Assembly: GCA_025201805.1 (NCBI GenBank)
Contig: MU619285.1
Location: forward strand, 93,942 to 157,941
Reading direction: 5' to 3'
DNA from: Parasitella parasitica NRRL 2501
Taxonomy: Eukaryota > Fungi > Mucoromycota
DNA length: 64,000 bases
Position 1 is the stretch's first letter, and the number at the start of each line of letters is the position of its first letter. The position numbers and the translations under genes were made by a program. Shown here piece after piece: positions 26,447 through 39,700 of this stretch. The notes beneath the pieces were generated by a model. That model was not told the DNA's origin and made no database searches. It worked only from the letters and a program-made list of their open reading frames with translations.

Positions 26447-28777
26447 ATGGACATACAAACGAATGTGACCATGGACATGAATATGCACATGGCTATGGAC
26501 AACAAAAACGCTATGCCAGAGACTGATATTTTAGACGATGAAAGCAACTTACCAATACACTTTGTTGCGGCGAAAAGAATTACAATAAAAGATTATCTGA
26601 AGAAGCCTGAAGATTTCCGTAGTTTGGTACACGACTACTGTATTCGCAAAGGAAAGCCTTTGGTTATATCTGATATGAATACAATGCGTGGCTGGAATGA
26701 TGCTACCTTTTCATTAGATCAGTTGAAAGAATACCGTGGTGATTTCTGTAAGTTTTGAAAACTGTCATTATTTTTACTCTTTTTTTTTTAATAACAAAGA
26801 AACCCATATCATAGTATCTGTCCTGGATTTTCCTAATAATGAGAAAAAAGAGGTTGTTCTTGGTAAATTTATAGAGAAATTACAGCAAGAAAATAAACTT
26901 GACAGCAACCATTCATATAAATCACTGAGGGACAGCTCAAGGAAGGTCTATGCCAAAGATATATCTTGCCCAGAGGAGTATGGAGGCTCATTGAAAAAGA
27001 TAATCCCCGACTTTCTACTGCCACATGGTTCAGATGATCTGTTCTCTATTTTGCCTAGACGATTCCGTGCTGAAAACCTCATGTGCTACTTGGGTCAAGA
27101 CAATACTGGCACTCCTGTTCATCGCGATTTATGTGGAACTATGGGTCACAATCTAATGACAATGGGCAACCCTGATAGCTTTGCAGAATGGATTATCATT
27201 GAACATGAGTATCGAGATAAATTAGCTGCTATTTTGCGCCCATCACAAACTGAAGATCTAGTTGCAAACCTCTCTACTCCACCAAAATACACGAAAAGTT
27301 CATTCATGGAAAGTGATCGTGCTTGGCTTGAAAATTCAACGCTCGAAAATGCTTCATTTCAAGCTCAAGTTATTATTCAAAAGCTTGGTGACCTCGTCAT
27401 TATCCCTAGCCGTGCATACCATCAAGTGCGAAATGTAGGTGTCTCTATAAAGATAGCATGGAACCGAATTACAGCCCAAACACTTCAATACGCATTCGAA
27501 GATCAAATTCCATTGTATCAAACGATCATTCGCCCTGAAGTTTACAAATGTAAAGCTATTGTTTCATTGACATTGCAACATTGGAATACTCAATTGAAGC
27601 AGCTCCAGACTCGAAAGACGAAAGAGACAAGGTTCTACAAGTACCACGGATTCTATTCAAGAAGTAGCAGAGCTACTTTTTTCGAAAATTCAAGGATCCT
27701 GCTTGATTTGTTCTTGACTAATATCATTGCACCCGAGTTGCTTTACAACGATAACAAAGGAATTACTAAAGATGCAAAAGAAGAAGTATTCACAGTTCGC
27801 TGTGATTTCTGCTATGGCGATATCTTCCACCGCTACTATCATTGTGAAATCTGTAACAAGTATGACCTTTGTCTAAACTGCTACTCTATGGGACGCAGCT
27901 GCGAGCATGTCACTGAAATGAAGATGCATCAGAGCCCGAAAGGTCTTTTCATATATATCAAGCTTTATAGGGATTATGTGGAGAACCTCAATAAGGTTAT
28001 TGGCACCAGTCTTAATTATTATCTCGAGCAAGACAAAGAGAAGCCTCTATTAGAAATGTAAGCACACTCTTTCACATGTAAATATGATCTGACTTTCTTT
28101 AAATAGGAAACAATCAGAAGCATCTAATCTTGCAACTACATGTAGACGCCTGGAGAAATTCCGACGCAGCATGAAAGACCAGTTCAACACATTAAAATGT
28201 CAGCATTGCGGCTCAACAACAACTGTATCCGAGTTAGGCAATCAAGGTATTAGTTTAGCTTCTGTATTTAAGCGAGGTCTCTGCAGAAAGATCGAAAAGA
28301 AGAGATTTCAGCAATATGTGGACGTCTTTACTTGCAACGACTGCACTGCCAAATGTGACCAGTGTCTACCTTTGGAGAATGCCAACGAATCCTTAAAGGA
28401 TTACGATTTGGTTTACTATCTTCATCCAACCCATGACCCCAGAAACTGGGGCTGCTTTATTGATTTCAACGTTCAAAAGGTAAATCAAAGTTTGAGCATA
28501 CCATTGCTAAACTCAACACATTGACTCGCCCTTATTTTTGTAGACTTGTGATTTAGAAACTCAGGCACCTCCTACTCCTGCGCCTACGCTTACTCCTTCT
28601 CCTACGCCTACGCCTACTCCTACTCCTACTCCTACTCTTTCACCAAAGCTTGCAGCCAAACCCAAATCAACAACTAAACGAAAGCAAAGAGATGAAAATG
28701 ATGATACAGATACCCAAGAGAAAAAGAAAACTGGAGCCACCAAAGAAAAACGTAATCCAAAAGTAGCCAAAGAATGA
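26447..28777 (+). CDS. JmjC-domain protein with ZZ-like and further Cys-rich zinc fingers; exons 26447-26747, 26815-28057, 28107-28479, 28544-28777
   Basis: Fe(II) ligands 'GTPVHRD…AYHQVRN', 'CDFC…YHCEICNKYDLCLNC', a PT-repeat linker and a basic tail. Splice phases are consistent. Confidence 0.85.
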
Positions 28778-29088: not shown

Positions 29089-31297
29089 TTAACCCATTAG
29101 CCGCTTAAGATCTGTTAATCTTTGTCTCAATCCTTCCCTTTCGTTTTCACTTTCCGTGTATTTATCTTTAATTTCGATTATCATGTTTTCCATGTAAGCC
29201 AATTGATCTTCAAGGGCAGAGTTTCTCTCTACAAGGGCTGCGTTTTTAGTATACAATATTTCCATTTCTTCCTTGACTCGAGCTTCAACTTCTGCAGGCA
29301 AAGTTTCTAATGCTTTCTTTAGATCGTTTGATTGCTGACGGAGGGCTTCGTTTTCGTCATGGATGCGTGCAATGTCCATCTTGGCTGTTATCAATTCTGT
29401 CGCAACTTCTGTGTGCTCCTTGTTTAAATCGCTATACTCCAAATCCATTCTTTTTATTGATTCAGCCAGTGCTTTGTTTTGACGTTTAAGTGCTTCTATT
29501 GCTTCTGCCTCGTTATTCGCTCTAGCAGATTCCACTTGATAGTCTTTTGCTAATCGCTCGAGTCTTTTGGACATGACGTGGATTTGAAAAGCGTCTTTTA
29601 CTAACTGATTAGCGTCATCCTAAGGAAAATAATCATGAGTATTCAATACTTAAGTAGATATTTGCGCATATTACTATGTAAGCAACGAGTAAATCATTCT
29701 TTAAAAAGTTGATCAAATCATCAAATTCAAGACTGAGGATGGTCGATTGACTTTTCTCTAGCAGCGCAATAGAGAAGCGGTGTAATGTCTCTATCCCCTC
29801 AGCAAATATCATATCATAGATTCGAAAGACCGTATCCAAGGGAAATTTGAATGCGAACAAAGTGCTGAACCATTGATATGCGTATACGTTTGATCGAATT
29901 CCATGTACTTCGAAATGCCTTTGAGTGTGTGGTAAATGGTCTGCTACTAGGCCTTCCAATTGGTATAATCGTTGTGATAACAGTTCTGACTGAGGCAGGA
30001 AATGACCTCTCAAGTCATATTTGTTCATTAGCTGAACGATAACGCAAAACGCCTCTTCTTCTGGCATCTATATTTGTATCAGCATGTTTATTTGTGTGCA
30101 CATGCAGCTAATGACAACACTTACATTCAAGAGCAAAGGACCAGCGATATGCAATAACCCTTGGCTGTATCCCACCTCTGTATCATACAGAGAATATGCT
30201 TTCACTACATTAAAAAGTGCCTCCTGGCCGTCTTGATCTGTGAAGTATTCATGGTTTATAAAAGAAGCTCTCGGTAAATCTCTTGCGATGGCCTTTTCGT
30301 AAACAGACTCCTCTTTAAGTAGTTGCATATATTGTTCTTCGAGTTTCACATTTTTGCTTTTTGCAAACAACTGCCATATCATGCCACGAAGAGTTGGCGG
30401 AATCCCTCTTTGAATGTTGTATGACAATACTTTTGACTCTGACTTGGCAACACTGCTAAAGTCTGAAATAACTTTTGACCAGAACTCTATGTTATGAACA
30501 AGGAGCAAAAACAAAATGAGAAGGGGGGGAAGAGAGAGAGAGAGGGAAAGGGAGGGGGAGAGGAAGCACATTTAGTGCATTAGTTTTATAGAAAAACAAA
30601 GGTTTACAACTTGCTTACCCCAATCTATTTCGTCTTCATCGCCTTTACATACAGTGTCATTATAGACTTTATCAAACGAATGTCTTTTATCTTGAGTTGG
30701 AGTATTCAGTGTGCTAGTACTAGTTGAGGAAGCTGTATCTTTTGACCCTAATCTAGCCAATAGCAAGTCATAATTAGATGCACTTGAAGCAAAAGAATGG
30801 ATCGAGGATATTGTAGAACGATGACTTTGGTGTCTGTTATGTCCTGTTACCAGATCATCATCATTATCATCGAAATCTGAATCTGATAGGTTATGGTTAC
30901 CATCGATAAACGATTCATCTAGCTCATGGATTTGGTCCTGGAGATTCATATCATCAAACGCTTCGGTGACTGTAGCATTTGAGTGCTGTTCCCCTGACTT
31001 CTTTTCATTGTTTGCTGCTAACTTTTCAGCTTCTCCTGGCCGGTTGTTTTGAGTCACTGTTAAAGCACGACCACGGTGTTGCTTTATGGTGGGTATACTG
31101 GTTGCTATGACATCCTTTTCATTTTGCTGCTGTAGCTCGGCGATCGTATCCAAGGAATCATGATCTGCATCATCGGAATATGTGTCTGCAATTGAACTCT
31201 GATTGGAGCGAATGGTAATTGCAGATCCATCTATAATTAATGAATCATCTTGCTTGTTGTTGTCGTTAACAGGTTTGTGAATCGCTATTTCCGCCAT
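29089..31297 (-). CDS. Rab GTPase-activating protein, TBC domain + coiled coil (Gyp5/EVI5-like), 4 exons
   Basis: 'GIPPTLRGMIWQ', 'IARDLPR', 'VGYSQGL', 'YAYQWFSTLF' and a C-terminal coiled coil. Confidence 0.9.
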
Positions 31298-32865: not shown

Positions 32866-34590
32866 CTACTCTAATAAATCATCAGCCTCTCCTTCCATCA
32901 ATGTATCACCAACGACTTGATGCACCTTTTTCCAATGAACTCTTTCCTGATTTCCAGTATCACGATCACGGATAGTTACAGTTTCGTCCTCCAAGCTTTG
33001 ATAGTCGACAGTGATGCACCAGGGCGTGCCAATTTCATCATGACGGTAATATCTCTTGCCAATCTTCAACTTTTGAGATTCAACTACTGTGAACAATCCT
33101 TTGCGTCTCAACGATTTGGCCACCTTTTGTGTAAGTGAGTTGAAATCAGGTTTACCAGTCAATGGCATGATTGCGCATTTGATAGGCGCTAATCGAGGAT
33201 CTAATTTGAGAACGTTGCGAGGCGGCTTTCCTTTGCCATCCTCAATTTGATGAAATGCATCGCATAAATAGGCCAGCATGGCCCGATTCAGGCCACATGA
33301 ACTTTCAACTACGTGAGGCACGTATCGAGCAGGCAATTCTGTGGGTATTAAATCGGCCTCTCCTTCACCAGACTCCTGAATAGCATCAGAGAAAACAGGT
33401 TGCATTTCTTCCACAATTTCAAAGTTGGCGCCTGTGTTTTTGATGTGTTGCGTTAAATCGTAATTGCCTCTGTGCGCTACACCCTCAATTTCTCCCCAGC
33501 CCCAAGGATAAAGATATTCGACATCGGTACAGCCAGTAGCGTAATGAGCCATTTCATCAGATGCATGATCTCGCTGCCTAAAGTTTTCCGGATGGCAAGC
33601 ATGTTCCAACCACCAGTTGTACCTCTCTTTACGCCAATATTTAAAGTAATACTTTGCTTCCCAAGGCGCAACAAAATATTCCAGTTCCAATTGCTCGAAC
33701 TCGGGGGTTCTGAAGATACCATGTTCCAAGCGAATTTCGTTCCTGAATGATTTGCCAACTTGCGCAATGCCAAACGGAGGCTTTGTCTTCATGGTGCGAA
33801 CGACCTGCTCAAAATTAACAAAAACGCCTTGTGCTGTCTCTGGTCTAAGATATACTGTGCTCGGCTTAAGAACATCGTCTACAGCCTCCCGAATGACAGG
33901 CTTTATATCGTTGGGATGGTCTATAGTTGTTTGAATGACACGATCGATTGGGTCAATAGGGTCCAAAAAGGTCTTAAACATCAAATTGAAAGGCCTGCTA
34001 TCTGTCAAAAAGGGTGAGTTAGAGTTTGGTTCGACATAGCCATTATAGGGTAATTCCAATGGCTGTTGATGCTGATCCATCATTTCAAAAATAATCTTTC
34101 CATTTTGCCCTTTCTGATCAGGCTGACATATATTGGTGGTGTGTAGCAAGATGCATTTCCCGTCAACCGTCATCTTGACATTAGGAGCGAATTGTTCTCG
34201 AATGGGTTTTATCCAGGTGAGAGCTGTCTTTTTATCAGGTGCTGTAATGGGTATGTTCCCGTTTTTATCAGTGATTATTGCAGGTGCTTTATCGGGTCGA
34301 AAACGCTCTTTGGTAAGTGTACAATCAACCAGCAAATCAGTAAATTCATCAACATGACCCGAGGCCTTCAATACGGGATGGGGTGTCAAAATGCTCGTAT
34401 CCAGTCCAACAACATCATCACGATAATAGACATGGCGCCGCCACCAGGAGTTGAGGATGTTCTTCTTCAATTCAACCCCTAATGGTCCATAATCATAAGC
34501 ACCTCTTAATCCACCATAAATCTCTGCTGATTGATATAAAAATCCTCGGCGTCTGCATAGATCAAGCAATGAACGAAACTTTTGTGCCAT
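32866..34590 (-). CDS. Bacterial (Thermus/GlyQS)-type homodimeric glycyl-tRNA synthetase, POLG2-related; intronless. True start may lie in the N gap.
   Basis: 'LCRRRGFLYQSAEIYGG…YDYGPLGVELKKN', 'YLRPETAQG', motif 2 'GKSFRNEI…EFEQLELEYF', motif 3 'VESSCGLNR' and anticodon domain 'IGKRYYRHDEIGTPWCITVD'. Lacks the eukaryote-type insertion after motif 2. Confidence 0.88.
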   Translation of the reverse strand: MAQKFRSLLDLCRRRGFLYQSAEIYGGLRGAYDYGPLGVELKKNILNSWWRRHVYYRDDVVGLDTSILTPHPVLKASGHVDEFTDLLVDCTLTKERFRPDKAPAIITDKNGNIPITAPDKKTALTWIKPIREQFAPNVKMTVDGKCILLHTTNICQPDQKGQNGKIIFEMMDQHQQPLELPYNGYVEPNSNSPFLTDSRPFNLMFKTFLDPIDPIDRVIQTTIDHPNDIKPVIREAVDDVLKPSTVYLRPETAQGVFVNFEQVVRTMKTKPPFGIAQVGKSFRNEIRLEHGIFRTPEFEQLELEYFVAPWEAKYYFKYWRKERYNWWLEHACHPENFRQRDHASDEMAHYATGCTDVEYLYPWGWGEIEGVAHRGNYDLTQHIKNTGANFEIVEEMQPVFSDAIQESGEGEADLIPTELPARYVPHVVESSCGLNRAMLAYLCDAFHQIEDGKGKPPRNVLKLDPRLAPIKCAIMPLTGKPDFNSLTQKVAKSLRRKGLFTVVESQKLKIGKRYYRHDEIGTPWCITVDYQSLEDETVTIRDRDTGNQERVHWKKVHQVVGDTLMEGEADDLLE

Positions 34591-34609: not shown

Positions 34610-34777
34610 NNNNNNNNNNNNNNNNNNNNNNNNNNNNNNNNNNNNNNNNNNNNNNNNNNNNNNNNNNNNNNNNNNNNNNNNNNNNNNNNNNNNNNNNNNN
34701 NNNNNNNNNNNNNNNNNNNNNNNNNNNNNNNNNNNNNNNNNNNNNNNNNNNNNNNNNNNNNNNNNNNNNNNNNNNNN
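34610..34777. other. Assembly gap between the divergent GlyRS-like and SOM1 genes
   Basis: Run of N flanked by T and A homopolymers. Confidence 0.98.
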
Positions 34778-35189: not shown

Positions 35190-35376
35190 GCATTTTACAT
35201 ATACCTACTTTACCTTAAAACCTCTCCTTTTTAATTTGTACAGTTTATATGTATATATTTATACAATGATATATTAAAACGAATTTTTTAATTAATCATA
35301 CTTGAGATTTGGGTATAAAAGAGCTTTTGTAACTGTTCAAACTCCCGTTGTTTTTCTTCACATTTTCGTATTCAAA

Positions 35377-36396
35377 ATGACCCGTACTGTACCTGCATTT
35401 TGTGCTTTTCTGGCATGTTCTTTATTGACAGTTCAAGCTCAAACATCCGATATTGCTGCTCCTTATAATGCCATGGCGTCTATTTACGAAAATATGATAA
35501 ACTACTTTCATGAACATCCATTCACAGACGCATCCGGAAAGCCATCTCAAGCATTTCAAAACATGCTTCAACAAATGCAGACTGCAGATTCATCTAACGC
35601 AAATGCTGCTACGAACTCTGCTACTGATACGCAAAGATCTGCTGACATAGCTGTACCTGCTGCTCCTGCAATTGCCGCCAATGTAGTATTGCCTGCTGCT
35701 CCACCTATTGCTAACCCCAATGTTGTGACCAAGGTTGCTCCTGCTGATATTCCCATTGCATTGGCTGCCGGAGTTCCTGCATCAGTTGCTGCTGCTGCCG
35801 CTATTCCTCCGAATCAACCAGGTAGCTCAGCATCTCAAGAGCCTAATGTAAATCGTAACCCGTCTGCGCCTGTCACTCCTGCAGTACCTGAGACTCCAGC
35901 TATTGCACCTCAAGCGCCAGCTGTGGCGCCCCAATCTTCACCTGTAGTGCCCCAAACGCCCAACGTAGTGCCCGAAGCTCCTGTCGTTGTCCCAACCACT
36001 GGGGCTTCTTCTGCAGTTGAACCTGCACCTGCACCCATGCCTGATAATGTTCCAAGTAATCCATCAGTTGAAGCAGCTTCTATTGTACCTGTATCTACAC
36101 TTTATGGCTCTCAAACCTCCGCTGCAATACCAGCACAACCATCGACTACGGCTGTCCCTCCTTCGACTGCAGGAACTTCGCTGATGTCTAGAACTAACGC
36201 CATGAGTACTGCATCTTTATCTGCTACTCGATCTCTCCCAAGCAGCTTGTCTGCTTCTCGATCAGCCTCTGCCTCAGCTACTTCTACAATCCCTCCTATT
36301 TCTTCTTCCAACAATTTGCAACAAAGCAATAATATTGTTCTCTCAATGGCATTGGGTTTGGCAATTCTCTTTGTTACGATGGCCTCGTCCTTTTAG
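35377..36396 (+). CDS. Secreted Pro/Ala/Ser/Thr-rich, probably GPI-anchored cell-surface protein
   Basis: Signal peptide (MTRTVPAFCAFLACSLLTVQA), low-complexity body, and an omega-site-like 'SSS' followed by a hydrophobic C-terminus. Confidence 0.82.
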   Translation: MTRTVPAFCAFLACSLLTVQAQTSDIAAPYNAMASIYENMINYFHEHPFTDASGKPSQAFQNMLQQMQTADSSNANAATNSATDTQRSADIAVPAAPAIAANVVLPAAPPIANPNVVTKVAPADIPIALAAGVPASVAAAAAIPPNQPGSSASQEPNVNRNPSAPVTPAVPETPAIAPQAPAVAPQSSPVVPQTPNVVPEAPVVVPTTGASSAVEPAPAPMPDNVPSNPSVEAASIVPVSTLYGSQTSAAIPAQPSTTAVPPSTAGTSLMSRTNAMSTASLSATRSLPSSLSASRSASASATSTIPPISSSNNLQQSNNIVLSMALGLAILFVTMASSF

Positions 36397-36774: not shown

Positions 36775-39700
36775 ATGGATGATATCAAAAAACTTTTGGA
36801 TAAAACAGATCTTTTATCGCTAAAAGATACAAGGTTAACTATCATATCTTTATATGGCGTATCAGAAGCCAGGAAGCCATCAAACACTGTAGCTTTAGCA
36901 AACACGATAGTAGGAGCAAATGTTTTCACTTGTAGAAATGAAGTAAGCCTTTACGTATTTGATCGATACGAAAAAACAGACAGCTAATTCAGTCTTGTAG
37001 CCTGCTAGAAAGCCTGCGATTGAGGTTTGAACATTTTTTATTGATGATTACACTTTAAAAACTAATAATCAGTGCACAATAGCTGACAGAAGGAATTCAA
37101 TATTATTTGGATAAAAACTCAAAGACGATATACTTGTTTGCTGACTCCAACATGAATGCAGCAAGTCTGTCTGCAGAGAAGCCATTTTCAGCTAGTATGA
37201 TGGACCATCAATCAGCAACGACCAAAGCGCTACTTTTCATGCTGATTGTATCTCATCTCGTCATCGTAAGAACTCAAGCCAGACCAATATGCATCGACTA
37301 AACAAAAAATTATCCACATAATAGCCCATTCTACCGCCTTCATTCCTGCCCGCCGATTTTCTATCAACCTTGGTCGCACTAGCACAGATAAAATCCAATA
37401 TGCACACTCATTTAGCACAATATCAGTCGTCATGCTGGAAGCATTGGGACGTTGCAGTGCCCAATGCATTGTTCGAAAAGAAAGACAACGAAAGGATGAA
37501 CCCGGCACTTTTGGGCTGGTGGGGGCCAGCAAAAGGCGTCCCTATACTTGTGTTTGTGATTGCCAATGTCAGCTTTTCAGAGATCGTCCCTGCCACCATC
37601 AAGAAAATGCAAGATTCACTCCAGATCAAGCTAAAGACCATATTCAGGGCGCTACATTTGATGCCATTAAAAGCCGAAGGAAACTCATCGCATCCACCTG
37701 TAGAAGTTCGATCACTGTTTGTATTACCCTCGAGTGCTCAACCTGTCATTCATATCGTCCCATCGCCGATCACCAAGGATTTGGTCACAGATTTTTCCTT
37801 TGATGAACCCGTCTCTTTATCGTCTTATATGATGTTTAAAGAACCGTCTTCAGCAAACCTGCATCTCGACTATAGCGGCAGACTGTTGAAAAACTATGTC
37901 AATATTTGGACAAAGTCGGCAATTGGAAGACATCCTTTACATAACAACTTTAATAGTCGAAAATCAGACACTCCAAAAGTTGTTCCGTTGCCTACAGGCA
38001 TACAATTTATCTCTGCTGTGGTACCTCTAATGTCTTTCATCTTTAACCAGCCCATTACTGAAGATGGAGTCGAGTTCAAAAAAGTGATATCAGCACAGTT
38101 CCCTAGCACAAAAGGCATGATTCAACAGATAGAGGTGATTCTGAGGAAAAAGATCAGAGACAACATCGAGATCGAACGAGTGTTTTCAAAAAGGTGAGAC
38201 TAGTGCATTAGTACTCTACGGTATTTTATTGTTTTATAACCTGGTTGCTATGATAGCCACTCTATGGATGTGATGCAGAAATGCCACGAAGCATACATGC
38301 AGGATTCGCCGCCGTTTTACACAGAACAATACCATAGTTGGAAGGTAACAACCGAAACACTAACGATAAGCCCTGCTAAATGCTGATACTAGAAAAACAA
38401 TGTCATGAGAATGTATCGCTCTCTTGCACAAGGTCCCTGCATGGAAGAATACGCCATAAAATTAGAGCGTGAATGCGACAATGTTTGGAAAGGTGGTAGG
38501 CAAAGCTGCGAGCACATTAGCCTAACGGGTAAAGCATGTCGGTTGAAGATGGGTCATGAGAAAGAGGTCATTTCACCCAAGCAATTGCGCGACGAAAGAG
38601 CTGTGATTGTAAATCCAGTCAAACACAACAGTGGGTACAACTTTTTCCATGCGTGCGATTGCGGGAGGACGCAAGGTGTTCGCGAGGACCCGTTCGACAT
38701 TCAAGAAGCAAATATCAAGTTTTACAACAAGTTTAGCTGCTGTCTGAGCGCAGGAAGAGTTGCTTTGGATATAAAAAAGTCGACTTTTGGAGAAGATCAA
38801 GATTTGGTTTTAAACTCTGACGAGATACCAGCCCATGATGCTGCTTTGCTCTGCCTTGGACCAGCAAATCTGTATAAAAACAATGTAGGATTGGACAAGG
38901 CAGAAGGTTTTATGAGCAATACCAACTTCCTCATACCTTGGTCCATCACAACAACGAACGAGCTAAAATCAAGACAACAAGAAGCAGCAAACGAAGCAGC
39001 AACTACAGCAATGAATGATTCAGCTTCTTCGTCACCATCTAACAACAATAATTTAACAGTTACGCGTGAGTCAGAATGGCCTGTATTGGGTAAAGCAGCT
39101 AGTGTGCAAAAGACAAACACGCAGTTTATTGCCCCTGTCGTAGCATCTCTGGAAGCATTTCCTGCATTGGGATCAAATCCACCGCCTGCAGCCGTTTCTA
39201 CTAGTATCATGACAGTGTCAACAGCAGCAGCGGCAGCACCTGCCCGACAATTATTTGACGCCAGACGTAAGAGACATCATCGTTCGCGTGATAGAATTCA
39301 GGGCTTGATCCGTGGTTACGTGGGCGCCGAATATGAATGTCCTCACGGGCATAGATTTCTTAGCTGCGGAGAAGGGCGTGTCTGTAAACTGGGTCATGCA
39401 GGACATCCAAAGGATCACGGCAACTATTTTGTGCATCAAGATCTGCCTGTCTATGTGATATGCCCTTGCACATATGCTAATAGTGCTAATGGCAGTGCAA
39501 ATACGAGCAGCGCAAATGGCAGCGTTAGTGCTTCTAATGGCACTCACAGCAAGGAAGTCATTGCTCAATTACAACGTCTATACATTGTCACCCCCGAAGA
39601 AGCCATCACCATATCGATTGAACCGAGAATTAAGGTATATGCAAATTTATCTGTGGGCTTGCTTGTAATCTGACGAATCTGCTGTTGCTAGATCAATATT

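What the first reader, a model, noticed from the sequence alone, without database searches (positions are those of the whole stretch)
32866..34590. Catalytically intact Thermus-type glycyl-tRNA synthetase with POLG2-like segments: candidate 'proto-POLG2' in a fungus
Seen: an intronless GlyRS among intron-containing fungal genes. It is not the usual eukaryotic GARS/Grs1: it has the bacterial GlyQS form ('EFEQLELEYF', 'YPWGWGEIEG', 'IGKRYYRHDEIGTP') and no eukaryotic insertion after motif 2. Established: the animal Pol gamma accessory subunit POLG2 is an inactivated derivative of Thermus/Deinococcus-type GlyRS and is generally described as animal-specific. Seen, comparing from memory, several segments look POLG2-like: 'LLDLCRRRGFL' (human LLEICQRRHFL), 'WWLEHACHPENF' (WWRKFAMSPSNF), 'LNRAMLAYLCDAF' (LDRGMLAYLYDSF) and 'RNVLKLDPRLAPIK' (RKVLKLHPCLAPIK). 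Yet the motif 2/3 catalytic residues (FRNE, EFEQxE, ExS.G..R) are kept. Inference: either an enzymatically competent descendant of the same acquisition that gave POLG2, moving it before the animal-fungal split, or an independent bacterial HGT giving the fungus a second GlyRS.
Basis: partly seen in the sequence, partly recalled or inferred. Interest (0 to 1): 0.88.

Follow-up and report, generated by a model that had tools for sequence, protein, structure and literature searches.

The report
Second, bacterial-type glycyl-tRNA synthetase; POLG2's kin
This fungus carries, besides its normal glycyl-tRNA synthetase, an intact bacterial-type one that was already present in the common ancestor of fungi and animals and is probably the gene lineage from which the animal mitochondrial DNA polymerase accessory subunit POLG2 evolved.

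Summary
Window 32866-34590 (minus strand) is one intronless 574-codon ORF encoding a dimeric (alpha2) class II glycyl-tRNA synthetase with all catalytic motifs. It lies among intron-bearing fungal genes. The genome also has a canonical, intron-bearing GARS.

Two labels were wrong. The protein is not the GlyQS (alpha2beta2) form and not specifically Thermus-like.

Orthologs occur in Mucoromycota, Mortierellomycota, Zoopagomycota and Blastocladiomycota, in Fonticula, in ichthyosporeans and Capsaspora, and in the sponge Sycon. In a site-heterogeneous ML tree all 29 eukaryote rows form one clade (98/96.6). That clade is sister to a clade of uncultured bacteria, and its internal order follows the Holozoa/Holomycota split. 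The fungus-only HGT reading is therefore rejected: the gene dates to the opisthokont ancestor.

No POLG2 sequence could be fetched by reference, so the decisive tree was not built. Three indirect results place POLG2 in or next to the holozoan branch:
- graded HMMER scores against solved POLG2 chains;
- POLG2's score profile, which is most like Sycon's (r = 0.90);
- a helix-loop-helix insertion at the site of POLG2's dimerisation element I4, which Thermus and Mycobacterium GlyRS lack.

The likely function is an active, probably mitochondrial, GlyRS.

The parts
32866..34590 (-). Complete intronless CDS (574 codons plus stop) of a bacterial-type alpha2 glycyl-tRNA synthetase ('GlyRS2')
   Evidence: ORF list. 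NCBIfam PRK04173 507 bits and TIGR00389 435 bits. AlphaFold2 model with mean pLDDT 93.3. Best structural matches are Mycobacterium GlyRS, Z 48.9.
34294..34590 (-). N-terminal part of the catalytic domain (aa 1-99; RRGF and YGPLG motifs). The start is short and basic, with no long presequence.
   Evidence: Alignments. N-terminus survey: fungi have 11-19 residues before K/RRRGF with 0-1 acidic residue.
33997..34293 (-). Insertion 1 (aa ~100-198), an alpha/beta module. The eukaryote clade shares it, and the sister bacteria have it in shorter form.
   Evidence: Alignments. Model secondary structure: H120-134 and strands 140-182, pLDDT above 90.
33856..33957 (-). Helix-loop-helix insertion (aa ~212-245) just before LRPETAQ. 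It sits at the site of POLG2's dimerisation element I4 (HLH-3beta).
   Evidence: It is present only in the eukaryote clade and the sister bacteria. It is absent from Thermus and Mycobacterium GlyRS, where profile positions 23-54 find no match. HMMER aligns POLG2 chains from profile position 31, but the delta-I4 construct only from position 64. The model has H214-223 and H230-244 flanked by three short strands.
33670..33777 (-). Motif 2 region (aa 272-307): PFGIAQVGKSFRNE ... EFEQLELEYF
   Evidence: R283, N284, E285, E297, Q300 and E302 are invariant in 61 sequences. By position in the Thermus alignment they correspond to Thermus R220 and E239.
33253..33318 (-). Motif 3 region (aa 425-446): PHVVESSCGLNRAMLAYLCDAF
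   Evidence: E429, G433 and R436 are invariant in 61 sequences.
32911..33180 (-). Anticodon-binding domain (aa 471-560)
   Evidence: Pfam HGTP_anticodon, E 1.1e-21.
34610..34777 (.). Run of 168 N (assembly gap or withheld stretch), 19 nt upstream of the start codon. It hides the promoter and 5'UTR.
   Evidence: Sequence read. N coordinates.

Best explanation
The ORF encodes an active homodimeric class II glycyl-tRNA synthetase of the bacterial alpha2 type. It would activate glycine with ATP at motifs 2 and 3 and transfer it to tRNA-Gly, whose anticodon is held by the C-terminal HGTP domain. It is the fungus's second GlyRS, beside a canonical intron-bearing GARS.

It is not a recent or fungus-specific transfer. 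The gene entered the lineage from a bacterium no later than the opisthokont ancestor. That bacterium was related to a clade now known from uncultured Marinimicrobia-, Myxococcota-, Planctomycetota-, Acidobacteriota- and Bdellovibrionota-labelled genomes. The gene has been inherited vertically since then. No Dikarya, chytrid or choanoflagellate sequence appeared among the named hits, and only one animal did, so it seems to have been lost widely.

Inferred, about 55-60%: it serves as the mitochondrial GlyRS in lineages whose canonical GARS is not dual-targeted.

Inferred, about 65%: animal POLG2 is a catalytically dead descendant of the holozoan branch of this same gene. On that reading the fungal gene is an intact co-orthologue of POLG2's ancestor rather than POLG2 itself.
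For: Enzyme identity:
- PRK04173 scores 507 bits.
- The model has pLDDT 93.3, and its best folds are Mycobacterium GlyRS (Z 48.9) and Thermus GlyRS (Z 43).
- Catalytic residues E251, R283, N284, E285, E297, Q300, E302, E429 and R436 are invariant across 61 homologues.

Resident fungal gene: eukaryotic intron-bearing neighbours, GC 0.435 against 0.39 for the window, and 92% identity to the Parasitella orthologue.

Second copy: the canonical GARS is at G000:C51.

Distribution: named orthologues in Mucorales, Umbelopsis, Endogonales, Mortierellomycota, Kickxellomycotina, Entomophthoromycotina and Blastocladiomycota; and in Fonticula, Amoebidium, Creolimax, Sphaeroforma, Chromosphaera, Capsaspora, Pigoraptor and Sycon.

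Tree (IQ-TREE, LG+C20+F+G4, 54 rows; supports are UFBoot/SH-aLRT):
- eukaryotes form one clade, 98/96.6;
- eukaryotes plus sister bacteria, 100/100;
- fungi, 99/99.7;
- the Holozoa side (51/77.8) and the Holomycota side (61/89) are both recovered.

Mitochondrial role: MTS-like presequences of 36-95 aa in Creolimax, Capsaspora, P0112 and P0124, while fungal N-termini are stripped of the acidic residues seen in bacterial kin. The canonical GARS of this genome has no evident presequence from its ATG. A bacterial alpha2-type mitochondrial GlyRS is on record for a jakobid (PMC8754408).

POLG2 link, phmmer bits to mouse/human POLG2:
- Amoebidium 151/146;
- Sycon 131/123;
- sister bacterium L008 125/122;
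- Capsaspora 106/111;
- window 105/113;
- Actinomycetota 85/82;
- Planctomycetaceae 81/82;
- Bacillus 65/61.
Sycon scores high even though it is the sequence least like bacterial GlyRS. POLG2's score vector correlates best with Sycon (r 0.90), then Creolimax (0.72), Sphaeroforma (0.67) and Capsaspora (0.61); the correlation is negative with distant bacteria. The helix-loop-helix insertion is shared with POLG2 at the I4 site and is absent from Thermus and Mycobacterium. The model aligns 384-396 residues of full-length POLG2 chains but 353 of the delta-I4 chain.
Against: - No POLG2 sequence could be obtained, so POLG2's place rests on bit scores and one indel, not on a tree. The helix-loop-helix adds only 2-9 bits to the POLG2 alignments.
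- The bacterial sister L008 scores as high against POLG2 as the fungal protein does. A separate transfer from that bacterial clade into animals is therefore not excluded.
- Oliveira et al. 2015 (PMC4419789) hold that the HLH-3beta domain is a vertebrate novelty absent from most invertebrate POLG2.
- Fungal orthologues, Amoebidium and Sycon have no N-terminal presequence in their gene models, so mitochondrial import is unproven for this fungus.
- Mitochondrial tRNA-Gly carries A73 in nearly all eukaryotes (PMC8754408), so the canonical GARS could in principle charge it.
- There is no RNA evidence for expression.
- Holozoan long branches (Sycon 2.1, Capsaspora 1.7) make the inner topology weak.
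Confidence: 0.75

Rival explanations
1. POLG2 came from its own, animal-specific bacterial transfer: Thermus-Deinococcus as proposed by Wolf and Koonin in 2001, or the helix-loop-helix-bearing clade of uncultured bacteria. On this reading the opisthokont GlyRS2, this fungal gene included, is only a collateral relative and not POLG2's ancestor.
For: - The bacterial sister L008 scores 125/122 bits against POLG2, as high as or higher than the fungal protein and Capsaspora.
- The helix-loop-helix insertion also occurs in those bacteria.
- The literature places POLG2's origin in Metazoa (Wolf and Koonin 2001 as cited in PMC4419789).
- No tree with POLG2 was built here.
Against: - It needs a second transfer from the same narrow bacterial subfamily into a lineage that already held the gene; a sponge still has an intact copy.
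- Amoebidium (151) and the very divergent Sycon (131) score higher than any bacterium tested.
- POLG2's score profile tracks Sycon and other holozoans, not the sister bacteria, whose r is 0.3-0.55.
- Thermus GlyRS lacks the helix-loop-helix.
Confidence: 0.3
2. The protein is a cytosolic second GlyRS, or has a non-canonical role such as a stress isoform or dinucleotide synthesis, and is not the mitochondrial enzyme.
For: - There is no cleavable-looking presequence in about 20 fungal gene models from independent annotations, nor in Amoebidium or Sycon.
- Mitochondrial tRNA-Gly is A73 in fungi according to PMC8754408, so the canonical GARS could charge it.
Against: - Orthologues in Creolimax, Capsaspora, P0112 and P0124 carry arginine-rich extensions of 36-95 aa.
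- Fungal N-termini are basic and have lost the acidic residues of their bacterial kin.
- The canonical GARS of this genome shows no presequence from its ATG, yet some GlyRS must reach the mitochondrion.
- No orthologue was seen in groups whose GARS is known to be dual-targeted (yeast, animals).
Confidence: 0.3
3. The intact enzyme already doubles as a Pol gamma (Mip1) accessory factor in fungi and unicellular holozoans.
For: - The genome encodes Pol gamma (DNApol_Exo 355 bits).
- The fold superposes on nearly the whole of POLG2: Z 39, 395 of 415 residues.
- The helix-loop-helix dimerisation-type element is present.
Against: - There is no direct evidence. The complex prediction was not run by the tool.
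- From established knowledge, yeast Mip1 works as a single subunit.
- Strict conservation of all catalytic residues is fully explained by aminoacylation alone.
Confidence: 0.06
4. The gene is an independent bacterial transfer into this fungus or into Mucorales, or bacterial contamination of the assembly.
For: The gene is intronless, and its nearest non-eukaryote relatives are bacterial at about 45% identity.
Against: - The gene lies between intron-bearing eukaryotic genes on a fungal contig.
- Orthologues span four fungal phyla and Holozoa.
- The eukaryote clade has support 98/96.6 and the gene tree tracks the species tree.
Confidence: 0.02

Closest known systems
Bacterial alpha2 glycyl-tRNA synthetase (Thermus thermophilus 1ATI/1B76; Mycobacterium 8T5N, 8U2Q, 8SLD)
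   Same: It has the same fold (Z 43-49, 45-48% identity over about 390-440 aligned residues) and the same motifs 1-3, glycine-pocket glutamates and HGTP anticodon domain. It passes the NCBIfam equivalog cut-offs.
   Different: It carries two insertions that those enzymes lack: aa ~100-198 and the helix-loop-helix at aa ~212-245. It is encoded in a eukaryote nucleus. It is not specifically Thermus-like.
Helix-loop-helix-bearing alpha2 GlyRS of uncultured bacteria (L008-L012, P0088-P0120; labelled Marinimicrobia, Myxococcota, Planctomycetota, Acidobacteriota, Bdellovibrionota)
   Same: They form the sister clade (100/100 together with the eukaryotes). They share the helix-loop-helix insertion and a form of insertion 1, and are 44-50% identical to the eukaryote proteins.
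   Different: They are bacterial, have acidic N-terminal tails, and most have a shorter insertion 1 with a CxxC knuckle.
POLG2 (Pol gamma accessory subunit, animals)
   Same: It is homologous over nearly its whole length (E 1e-31; Z 39.1; 395 of 415 residues aligned; 26-28% identity). It has the same anticodon-binding-like C-terminal domain and an insertion at the same site as the I4/HLH-3beta dimerisation element.
   Different: By established knowledge POLG2 has lost the catalytic residues and binds Pol gamma A and DNA. This protein keeps every catalytic residue and has insertion 1. No interaction with Pol gamma is shown.
Eukaryotic/archaeal-type GARS1 / Grs1
   Same: It has the same enzymatic reaction and dimeric class II architecture. 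Both are present in this genome.
   Different: It is a distinct subfamily: 237 bits to human GARS against 372 to bacterial GlyRS. Canonical GARS-type rows fall in a separate clade. The canonical gene here has introns.
Bacterial alpha2-type mitochondrial GlyRS of the jakobid Andalucia godoyi (PMC8754408)
   Same: It is a precedent for a eukaryote using a bacterial alpha2 GlyRS as its dedicated mitochondrial enzyme.
   Different: The other protist bacterial-like GlyRS that were found (Percolomonas, Cardiosporidium) fall outside the opisthokont clade. A common origin is therefore not shown.

Membership tests
Dimeric (alpha2) class II glycyl-tRNA synthetase, bacterial type (NCBIfam PRK04173 / TIGR00389) | Whole-protein score above the curated equivalog cut-off | tested here: met
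   PRK04173 scores 507 bits (cut-off 312). TIGR00389 scores 435 bits (cut-off 243).
Dimeric (alpha2) class II glycyl-tRNA synthetase, bacterial type (NCBIfam PRK04173 / TIGR00389) | Class II motifs 2 and 3 and the acidic glycine pocket are intact (Thermus E188, R220, E239, E359, R366) | tested here: met
   The window equivalents E251, R283, E302, E429 and R436 are invariant in 61 sequences. Positions were mapped through the Thermus alignment. The residue roles come from Arnez et al. 1999 (own knowledge).
Dimeric (alpha2) class II glycyl-tRNA synthetase, bacterial type (NCBIfam PRK04173 / TIGR00389) | C-terminal HGTP anticodon-binding domain and the GlyRS fold | tested here: met
   PF03129, E 1.1e-21. 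Z 48.9 to Mycobacterium GlyRS and 43 to Thermus GlyRS.
Dimeric (alpha2) class II glycyl-tRNA synthetase, bacterial type (NCBIfam PRK04173 / TIGR00389) | Glycylation of tRNA-Gly | not testable with these tools
   This needs an aminoacylation assay.
Heterotetrameric GlyQS (alpha2beta2) GlyRS | Homology to the GlyQ alpha and GlyS beta subunits | tested here: not met
The NCBIfam hits are the dimeric GlyRS models plus weak ProRS, HisRS and ThrRS anticodon-domain matches. No GlyQ or GlyS model is hit.
Eukaryotic/archaeal-type GARS1 | Branches with eukaryotic GARS and is closest to it in sequence | tested here: not met
   237 bits to human GARS against 372 to bacterial GlyRS. GARS-type representatives form a separate clade. 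The canonical GARS is a different locus.
POLG2 (Pol gamma accessory subunit) | Loss of the aminoacylation active site | tested here: not met
   All catalytic residues are kept. The protein is therefore not filed as POLG2.
POLG2 (Pol gamma accessory subunit) | Helix-loop-helix (I4 / HLH-3beta) element between the motif-1 sheet and the strand equivalent to LRPETAQ | tested here: met
   The model has H214-223 and H230-244 with three flanking strands. POLG2 aligns from profile position 31, inside the insertion, but delta-I4 only from position 64. The model aligns 384-396 residues of wild-type chains against 353 of delta-I4. The sequence signal is weak (2-9 bits).
POLG2 (Pol gamma accessory subunit) | Binds the Pol gamma catalytic subunit and raises its processivity | not testable with these tools
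   The tool did not fold the complex-prediction job, so there is no verdict. This needs co-IP and processivity assays.
POLG2 (Pol gamma accessory subunit) | Nearest relative of POLG2 in a phylogeny | tested here: inconclusive
   No POLG2 sequence was obtainable by reference. The proxies point to the holozoan members of this gene's clade, not to the fungal ones in particular.

The most novel reading that the evidence does not exclude
Animal POLG2 is not the product of a Metazoa-specific transfer from Thermus-Deinococcus. It is a duplicated or neofunctionalised descendant of a bacterial-derived, probably mitochondrial, GlyRS that the opisthokont ancestor already had. That GlyRS survives intact in early-diverging fungi (this gene), Fonticula, ichthyosporeans, filastereans and at least one sponge. 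POLG2's HLH-3beta dimerisation element, described as a vertebrate novelty, would then be an inherited feature of this GlyRS subfamily that fast-evolving animal lineages lost.
Probability: 0.6. Interest if true: 0.82.

Novelty: new variant of a known kind. Interest (0 to 1): 0.72.

Why it matters
POLG2 is a textbook case of an aminoacyl-tRNA synthetase turned into a replication factor, and mutations in it cause human mitochondrial disease. Its origin is still described as a Metazoa-specific event. Wolf and Koonin 2001 proposed a bacterial transfer. A 2025 preprint (10.1101/2025.09.02.673565) states that POLG2 arose in Metazoa, is absent from Fungi and Choanoflagellata, and has GARS1 as its closest non-metazoan relative.

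An intact, vertically inherited sister lineage in fungi and unicellular holozoans would have three consequences:
- It re-dates the acquisition to before the animal-fungal split.
- It supplies living 'before' states, so the loss of catalysis and the gain of Pol gamma binding become experimentally testable in Mucor, Rhizopus, Capsaspora or Creolimax.
- It offers an origin for the HLH-3beta dimerisation element, whose source was sought without success (PMC4419789).

Separately, it shows that many early-diverging fungi run two GlyRS genes where yeast and animals use one dual-targeted gene. This bears on how mitochondrial aaRS sets were reshaped.

Tried and rejected
1. Fetching POLG2 sequences for a tree failed.
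- The protein atlas returned cluster names only.
- The search for homologous proteins lists the best 120 hits, and these are always GlyRS, even with the sponge and Amoebidium proteins as bridge queries.
- In the 50%-representative search POLG2 ranks far below the 150 listed.
The ML tree with POLG2 was therefore left out.

2. Printing a residue-level POLG2 alignment from the PDB search failed. The tandem POLG2 chain came sixth behind five GlyRS sequences every time, and only five alignments are shown. This held even for a profile trimmed of the N-terminal domain.

3. I considered whether a U73 mitochondrial tRNA-Gly forces a bacterial-type enzyme. The assembly has no mitochondrial contig (COX1 search blank), and PMC8754408 reports A73 in nearly all eukaryote mitochondria. 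The idea was dropped.

4. For expression and the 5' end, only one run holds the locus and it is probably the DNA source.

5. Complex prediction of the protein with the Pol gamma spacer region was not folded by the tool, so there is no verdict.

6. IQ-TREE with the mixture model on 126 rows did not finish. It was replaced by FastTree overviews and a 54-row careful tree.

7. The AU test on the five named holozoan rows alone gave p 0.039. With the unnamed row P0133 added, the group is already a clade in the best tree. The borderline value reflects the exclusion of P0133.

8. The search of earlier findings returned nothing.

9. The canonical GARS is spliced. It was looked at exon by exon only.

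10. No contig taken for human was met. Human POLG2 entered only as scores returned by the PDB tools.
Full report
**1. What is in the window.** The minus strand from 34590 down to 32866 is one open frame of 574 codons starting M-AQKFRSLLDLC. A run of 168 N (34610-34777) begins 19 nt upstream of the ATG, so the 5' flank cannot be read.

The protein passes the curated cut-offs of NCBI's two dimeric glycine--tRNA ligase models (PRK04173 507 bits; TIGR00389 435 bits). It has the class II core and the HGTP anticodon domain. Among solved structures the best sequence matches are Mycobacterium GlyRS (372 bits) and Thermus GlyRS (348). Human GARS scores 237 and POLG2 about 105-113.

So it is a bacterial-type alpha2 enzyme.

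The neighbours are ordinary eukaryotic genes broken by introns: JmjC, RabGAP-TBC and Smg8/9. The ORF's GC (0.435) is close to the window's 0.39. The same genome (32.8 Mb, 450 contigs) has a canonical GARS on contig C51, matched as three exons. I examined that gene exon by exon only and built no joined model.

**2. Is it intact?** In a 61-sequence alignment the residues that make a GlyRS work are invariant: E251 in LRPETAQ, R283-N284-E285 in FRNE, E297/Q300/E302 in EFEQxE, and E429/G433/R436 in motif 3. By position in the Thermus alignment they correspond to Thermus E188, R220, E239, E359 and R366 (the residue roles are from Arnez et al. 1999, own knowledge).

An AlphaFold2 model built on that alignment has mean pLDDT 93.3. 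It superposes on Mycobacterium GlyRS at Z 48.9 and on Thermus GlyRS at Z 43.

Two insertions stand out relative to those enzymes. One is an alpha/beta module at aa ~100-198. The other is a helix-loop-helix at aa ~212-245 (H214-223, H230-244) with three short strands at its base, directly before LRPETAQ.

**3. Who else has it.** The word-indexed search returned orthologues from:
- Mucorales (Parasitella, 92%), Umbelopsis and Endogonales;
- many Mortierellomycota, and Calcarisporiella;
- Dimargaris, Basidiobolus, Conidiobolus and Entomophthora;
- the blastoclads Allomyces, Paraphysoderma and Sorochytrium.
Bacterial hits followed at about 46% identity.

The exhaustive search of 50%-identity representatives, with names from cluster look-ups, added:
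- Fonticula alba;
- the ichthyosporeans Amoebidium, Creolimax, Sphaeroforma and Chromosphaera;
- Capsaspora and Pigoraptor;
- a 'glycine--tRNA ligase-like' protein of the calcareous sponge Sycon ciliatum;
- further fungi (Massospora, Catenaria, Dispira).

The Sycon protein keeps FRNE, EFEQME and ESSAGLDR. It has no close relative in any other animal in the database. No Dikarya, chytrid or choanoflagellate sequence appeared among the named hits. That is an observation, not proof of absence.

**4. Phylogeny.** FastTree overviews of 126 and 196 rows and a careful IQ-TREE analysis of 54 rows (LG+C20+F+G4 PMSF) agree. Supports below are UFBoot/SH-aLRT.
- All 29 eukaryote rows form one clade (98/96.6).
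- Their sister is a clade of 14 bacterial rows (92/97), from MAGs labelled Planctomycetota, Acidobacteriota, Bdellovibrionota, Myxococcota and, Marinimicrobia.
- The two clades together are separated from Bacillota, Actinomycetota, Bacteroidota and the other PVC GlyRS at 100/100.
- Inside the eukaryotes, fungi are a clade (99/99.7) with blastoclads near the base.
- Fonticula and unnamed metagenome sequences branch next.
- Holozoa plus Sycon plus the unnamed P0133 form the other side (51/77.8).

The gene tree thus follows the species tree as far as it is resolved. This means one acquisition no later than the opisthokont ancestor, followed by losses.

Other protists with bacterial-like alpha2 GlyRS (Percolomonas, Cardiosporidium) fall elsewhere. 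An origin older than Opisthokonta is therefore not shown.

**5. The POLG2 question.** I could not obtain any POLG2 sequence by reference (see Tried and rejected), so the decisive tree is missing. Three indirect tests were possible.

(a) Graded similarity. phmmer scores against solved mouse/human POLG2 chains were:
- Amoebidium 151/146;
- Sycon 131/123;
- sister bacterium L008 125/122;
- Capsaspora 106/111;
- window 105/113;
- Kribbella 85/82;
- Planctomycetaceae 81/82;
- Allomyces 70/72;
- Bacillus 65/61.
Relative to each query's score on Thermus GlyRS, the ratios are 0.50 for Sycon, 0.46 for Amoebidium, 0.35 for Capsaspora, 0.34 for L008, 0.30 for the window, and 0.17-0.21 for the distant bacteria. 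Sycon is the row least like bacterial GlyRS, yet it is among the most POLG2-like. This is expected if POLG2 branches near it, and is not expected if POLG2 came separately from bacteria.

(b) Score-profile correlation. Across the nine probes, POLG2's score vector correlates best with that of Sycon (r 0.90), then Creolimax (0.72), Sphaeroforma (0.67) and Capsaspora (0.61). The sister bacteria give 0.3-0.55, fungi about 0-0.4, and distant bacteria are negative. This is a heuristic on nine points.

(c) A shared indel.
- The helix-loop-helix insertion is present in every eukaryote row except the unnamed P0133 (largely missing there) and in the sister bacteria, and is absent elsewhere.
- With a profile of the eukaryote proteins, Thermus and Mycobacterium GlyRS leave profile positions 23-54 unmatched.
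- All full-length POLG2 chains align from position 31, at human residue 156.
- The delta-I4 construct aligns only from position 64 (the same pattern appears).
- Delta-I4 removes human R147-G179, most of the HLH-3beta dimerisation domain (PMC4419789).
- Structurally, the model aligns 384-396 residues of wild-type POLG2 chains but 353 of delta-I4.
- The sequence signal in the insertion is weak (2-9 bits), so this is positional and structural correspondence, not proof of homology.

Taken together, POLG2 belongs to this helix-loop-helix-bearing subfamily rather than to a Thermus-type GlyRS. Within the subfamily it looks closest to the holozoan and animal members. The parsimonious reading is that POLG2 arose in stem animals from the resident gene. 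I give this about 0.6-0.65. The rival is a second transfer from the sister bacteria, at about 0.3.

Thermus also has VLKL..LAPIK.

**6. What the fungal protein does.** Catalysis and tRNA binding follow directly from the conserved residues and the fold. Its location is inferred. Evidence for a mitochondrial location:
- Creolimax, Capsaspora and two unnamed eukaryote relatives have arginine-rich N-terminal extensions of 36-95 aa.
- Fungal proteins start only 11-19 residues before the K/RRRGF helix. They have lost the acidic residues that the bacterial proteins carry there.
- This genome's canonical GARS shows no presequence from its ATG.
- A jakobid is reported to use a bacterial alpha2 enzyme in its mitochondria (PMC8754408).

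Evidence against:
- No classical presequence exists in fungi, Amoebidium or Sycon.
- Mitochondrial tRNA-Gly has A73, so it does not require a bacterial-type enzyme.

I put mitochondrial GlyRS at 55-60%.

The genome does encode Pol gamma. Nothing shows an interaction, and the complex prediction was not run by the tool.

**7. Literature.** Full-text searches found no paper linking POLG2 to a fungal or holozoan GlyRS. A 2025 preprint states that Polg2 originated in Metazoa, is absent from Fungi and Choanoflagellata, and has GARS1 as its closest non-metazoan relative. Oliveira et al. 2015 root POLG2 on Thermus GlyRS, treat HLH-3beta as a vertebrate novelty, and report failing to find its source. 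The gene itself is already annotated as 'glycyl-tRNA synthetase' in many fungal genomes. What appears new is its opisthokont-wide vertical history and its bearing on POLG2.

**8. Verdict.** The thing itself is an ordinary-looking active enzyme of an undescribed eukaryotic GlyRS subfamily. Its interest is evolutionary, and it can be tested.

Noticed in passing
window 34610-34777: A run of 168 N is flanked by poly-T and poly-A on the coding strand, 19 nt upstream of the GlyRS2 start codon. It is an assembly gap or a withheld stretch. The upstream frame stays open through it.
   Followed up: partly
window 35302-36396 (+): A 364-aa Ser/Ala/Pro/Thr-rich ORF has a hydrophobic N-terminus and a hydrophobic C-terminal tail and no Pfam hit. 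It looks like a secreted or GPI-anchored mucin-like wall protein.
   Followed up: no
window 29089-31297 (-), 26736-28061 (+), 38405-39673 (+): Neighbouring eukaryotic genes: a RabGAP-TBC gene split over adjacent ORFs (introns) with a weak Sec10_N match beside it, a JmjC hydroxylase, and a Smg8/Smg9-family protein.
   Followed up: partly
G000:C51:26884-28846 (loci L001, L003, L005): The canonical eukaryote-type GARS of the same genome matches in three exons. The protein appears to start MSSAEKFDRAALE. An in-frame upstream ATG would add 23 residues that do not look like a targeting peptide.
   Followed up: partly
G000:C2:506820-510704 (L090): This is the only family-A polymerase locus found in the genome. 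It carries the mitochondrial DNApol_Exo domain (355 bits), so it is the Pol gamma / Mip1 orthologue.
   Followed up: partly
P0167 (Sycon ciliatum, 543 aa): A calcareous sponge keeps a catalytically intact member of this GlyRS2 clade on a very long branch. No close relative was found in any other animal in the database. Whether Sycon also has a separate POLG2 is unknown.
   Followed up: partly
L088:463-2442 (P0112) and L089:55-1719 (P0096), metagenome contigs: These unnamed intronless relatives branch with Fonticula (P0112) and just outside the remaining Holomycota rows, next to the holozoans (P0096). P0112 has an 82-aa arginine-rich presequence and lies on a gene-poor contig, which suggests uncultured opisthokont protists.
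   Followed up: partly
P0150 (Chromosphaera perkinsii, 1473 aa): The GlyRS2 homology occupies only the last ~400 residues of a 1473-aa predicted protein. This is either a fusion or a merged gene model.
   Followed up: no
G000 as a whole: No COX1 match was found anywhere in the 450-contig assembly, so the mitochondrial genome seems to have been left out of it.
   Followed up: no
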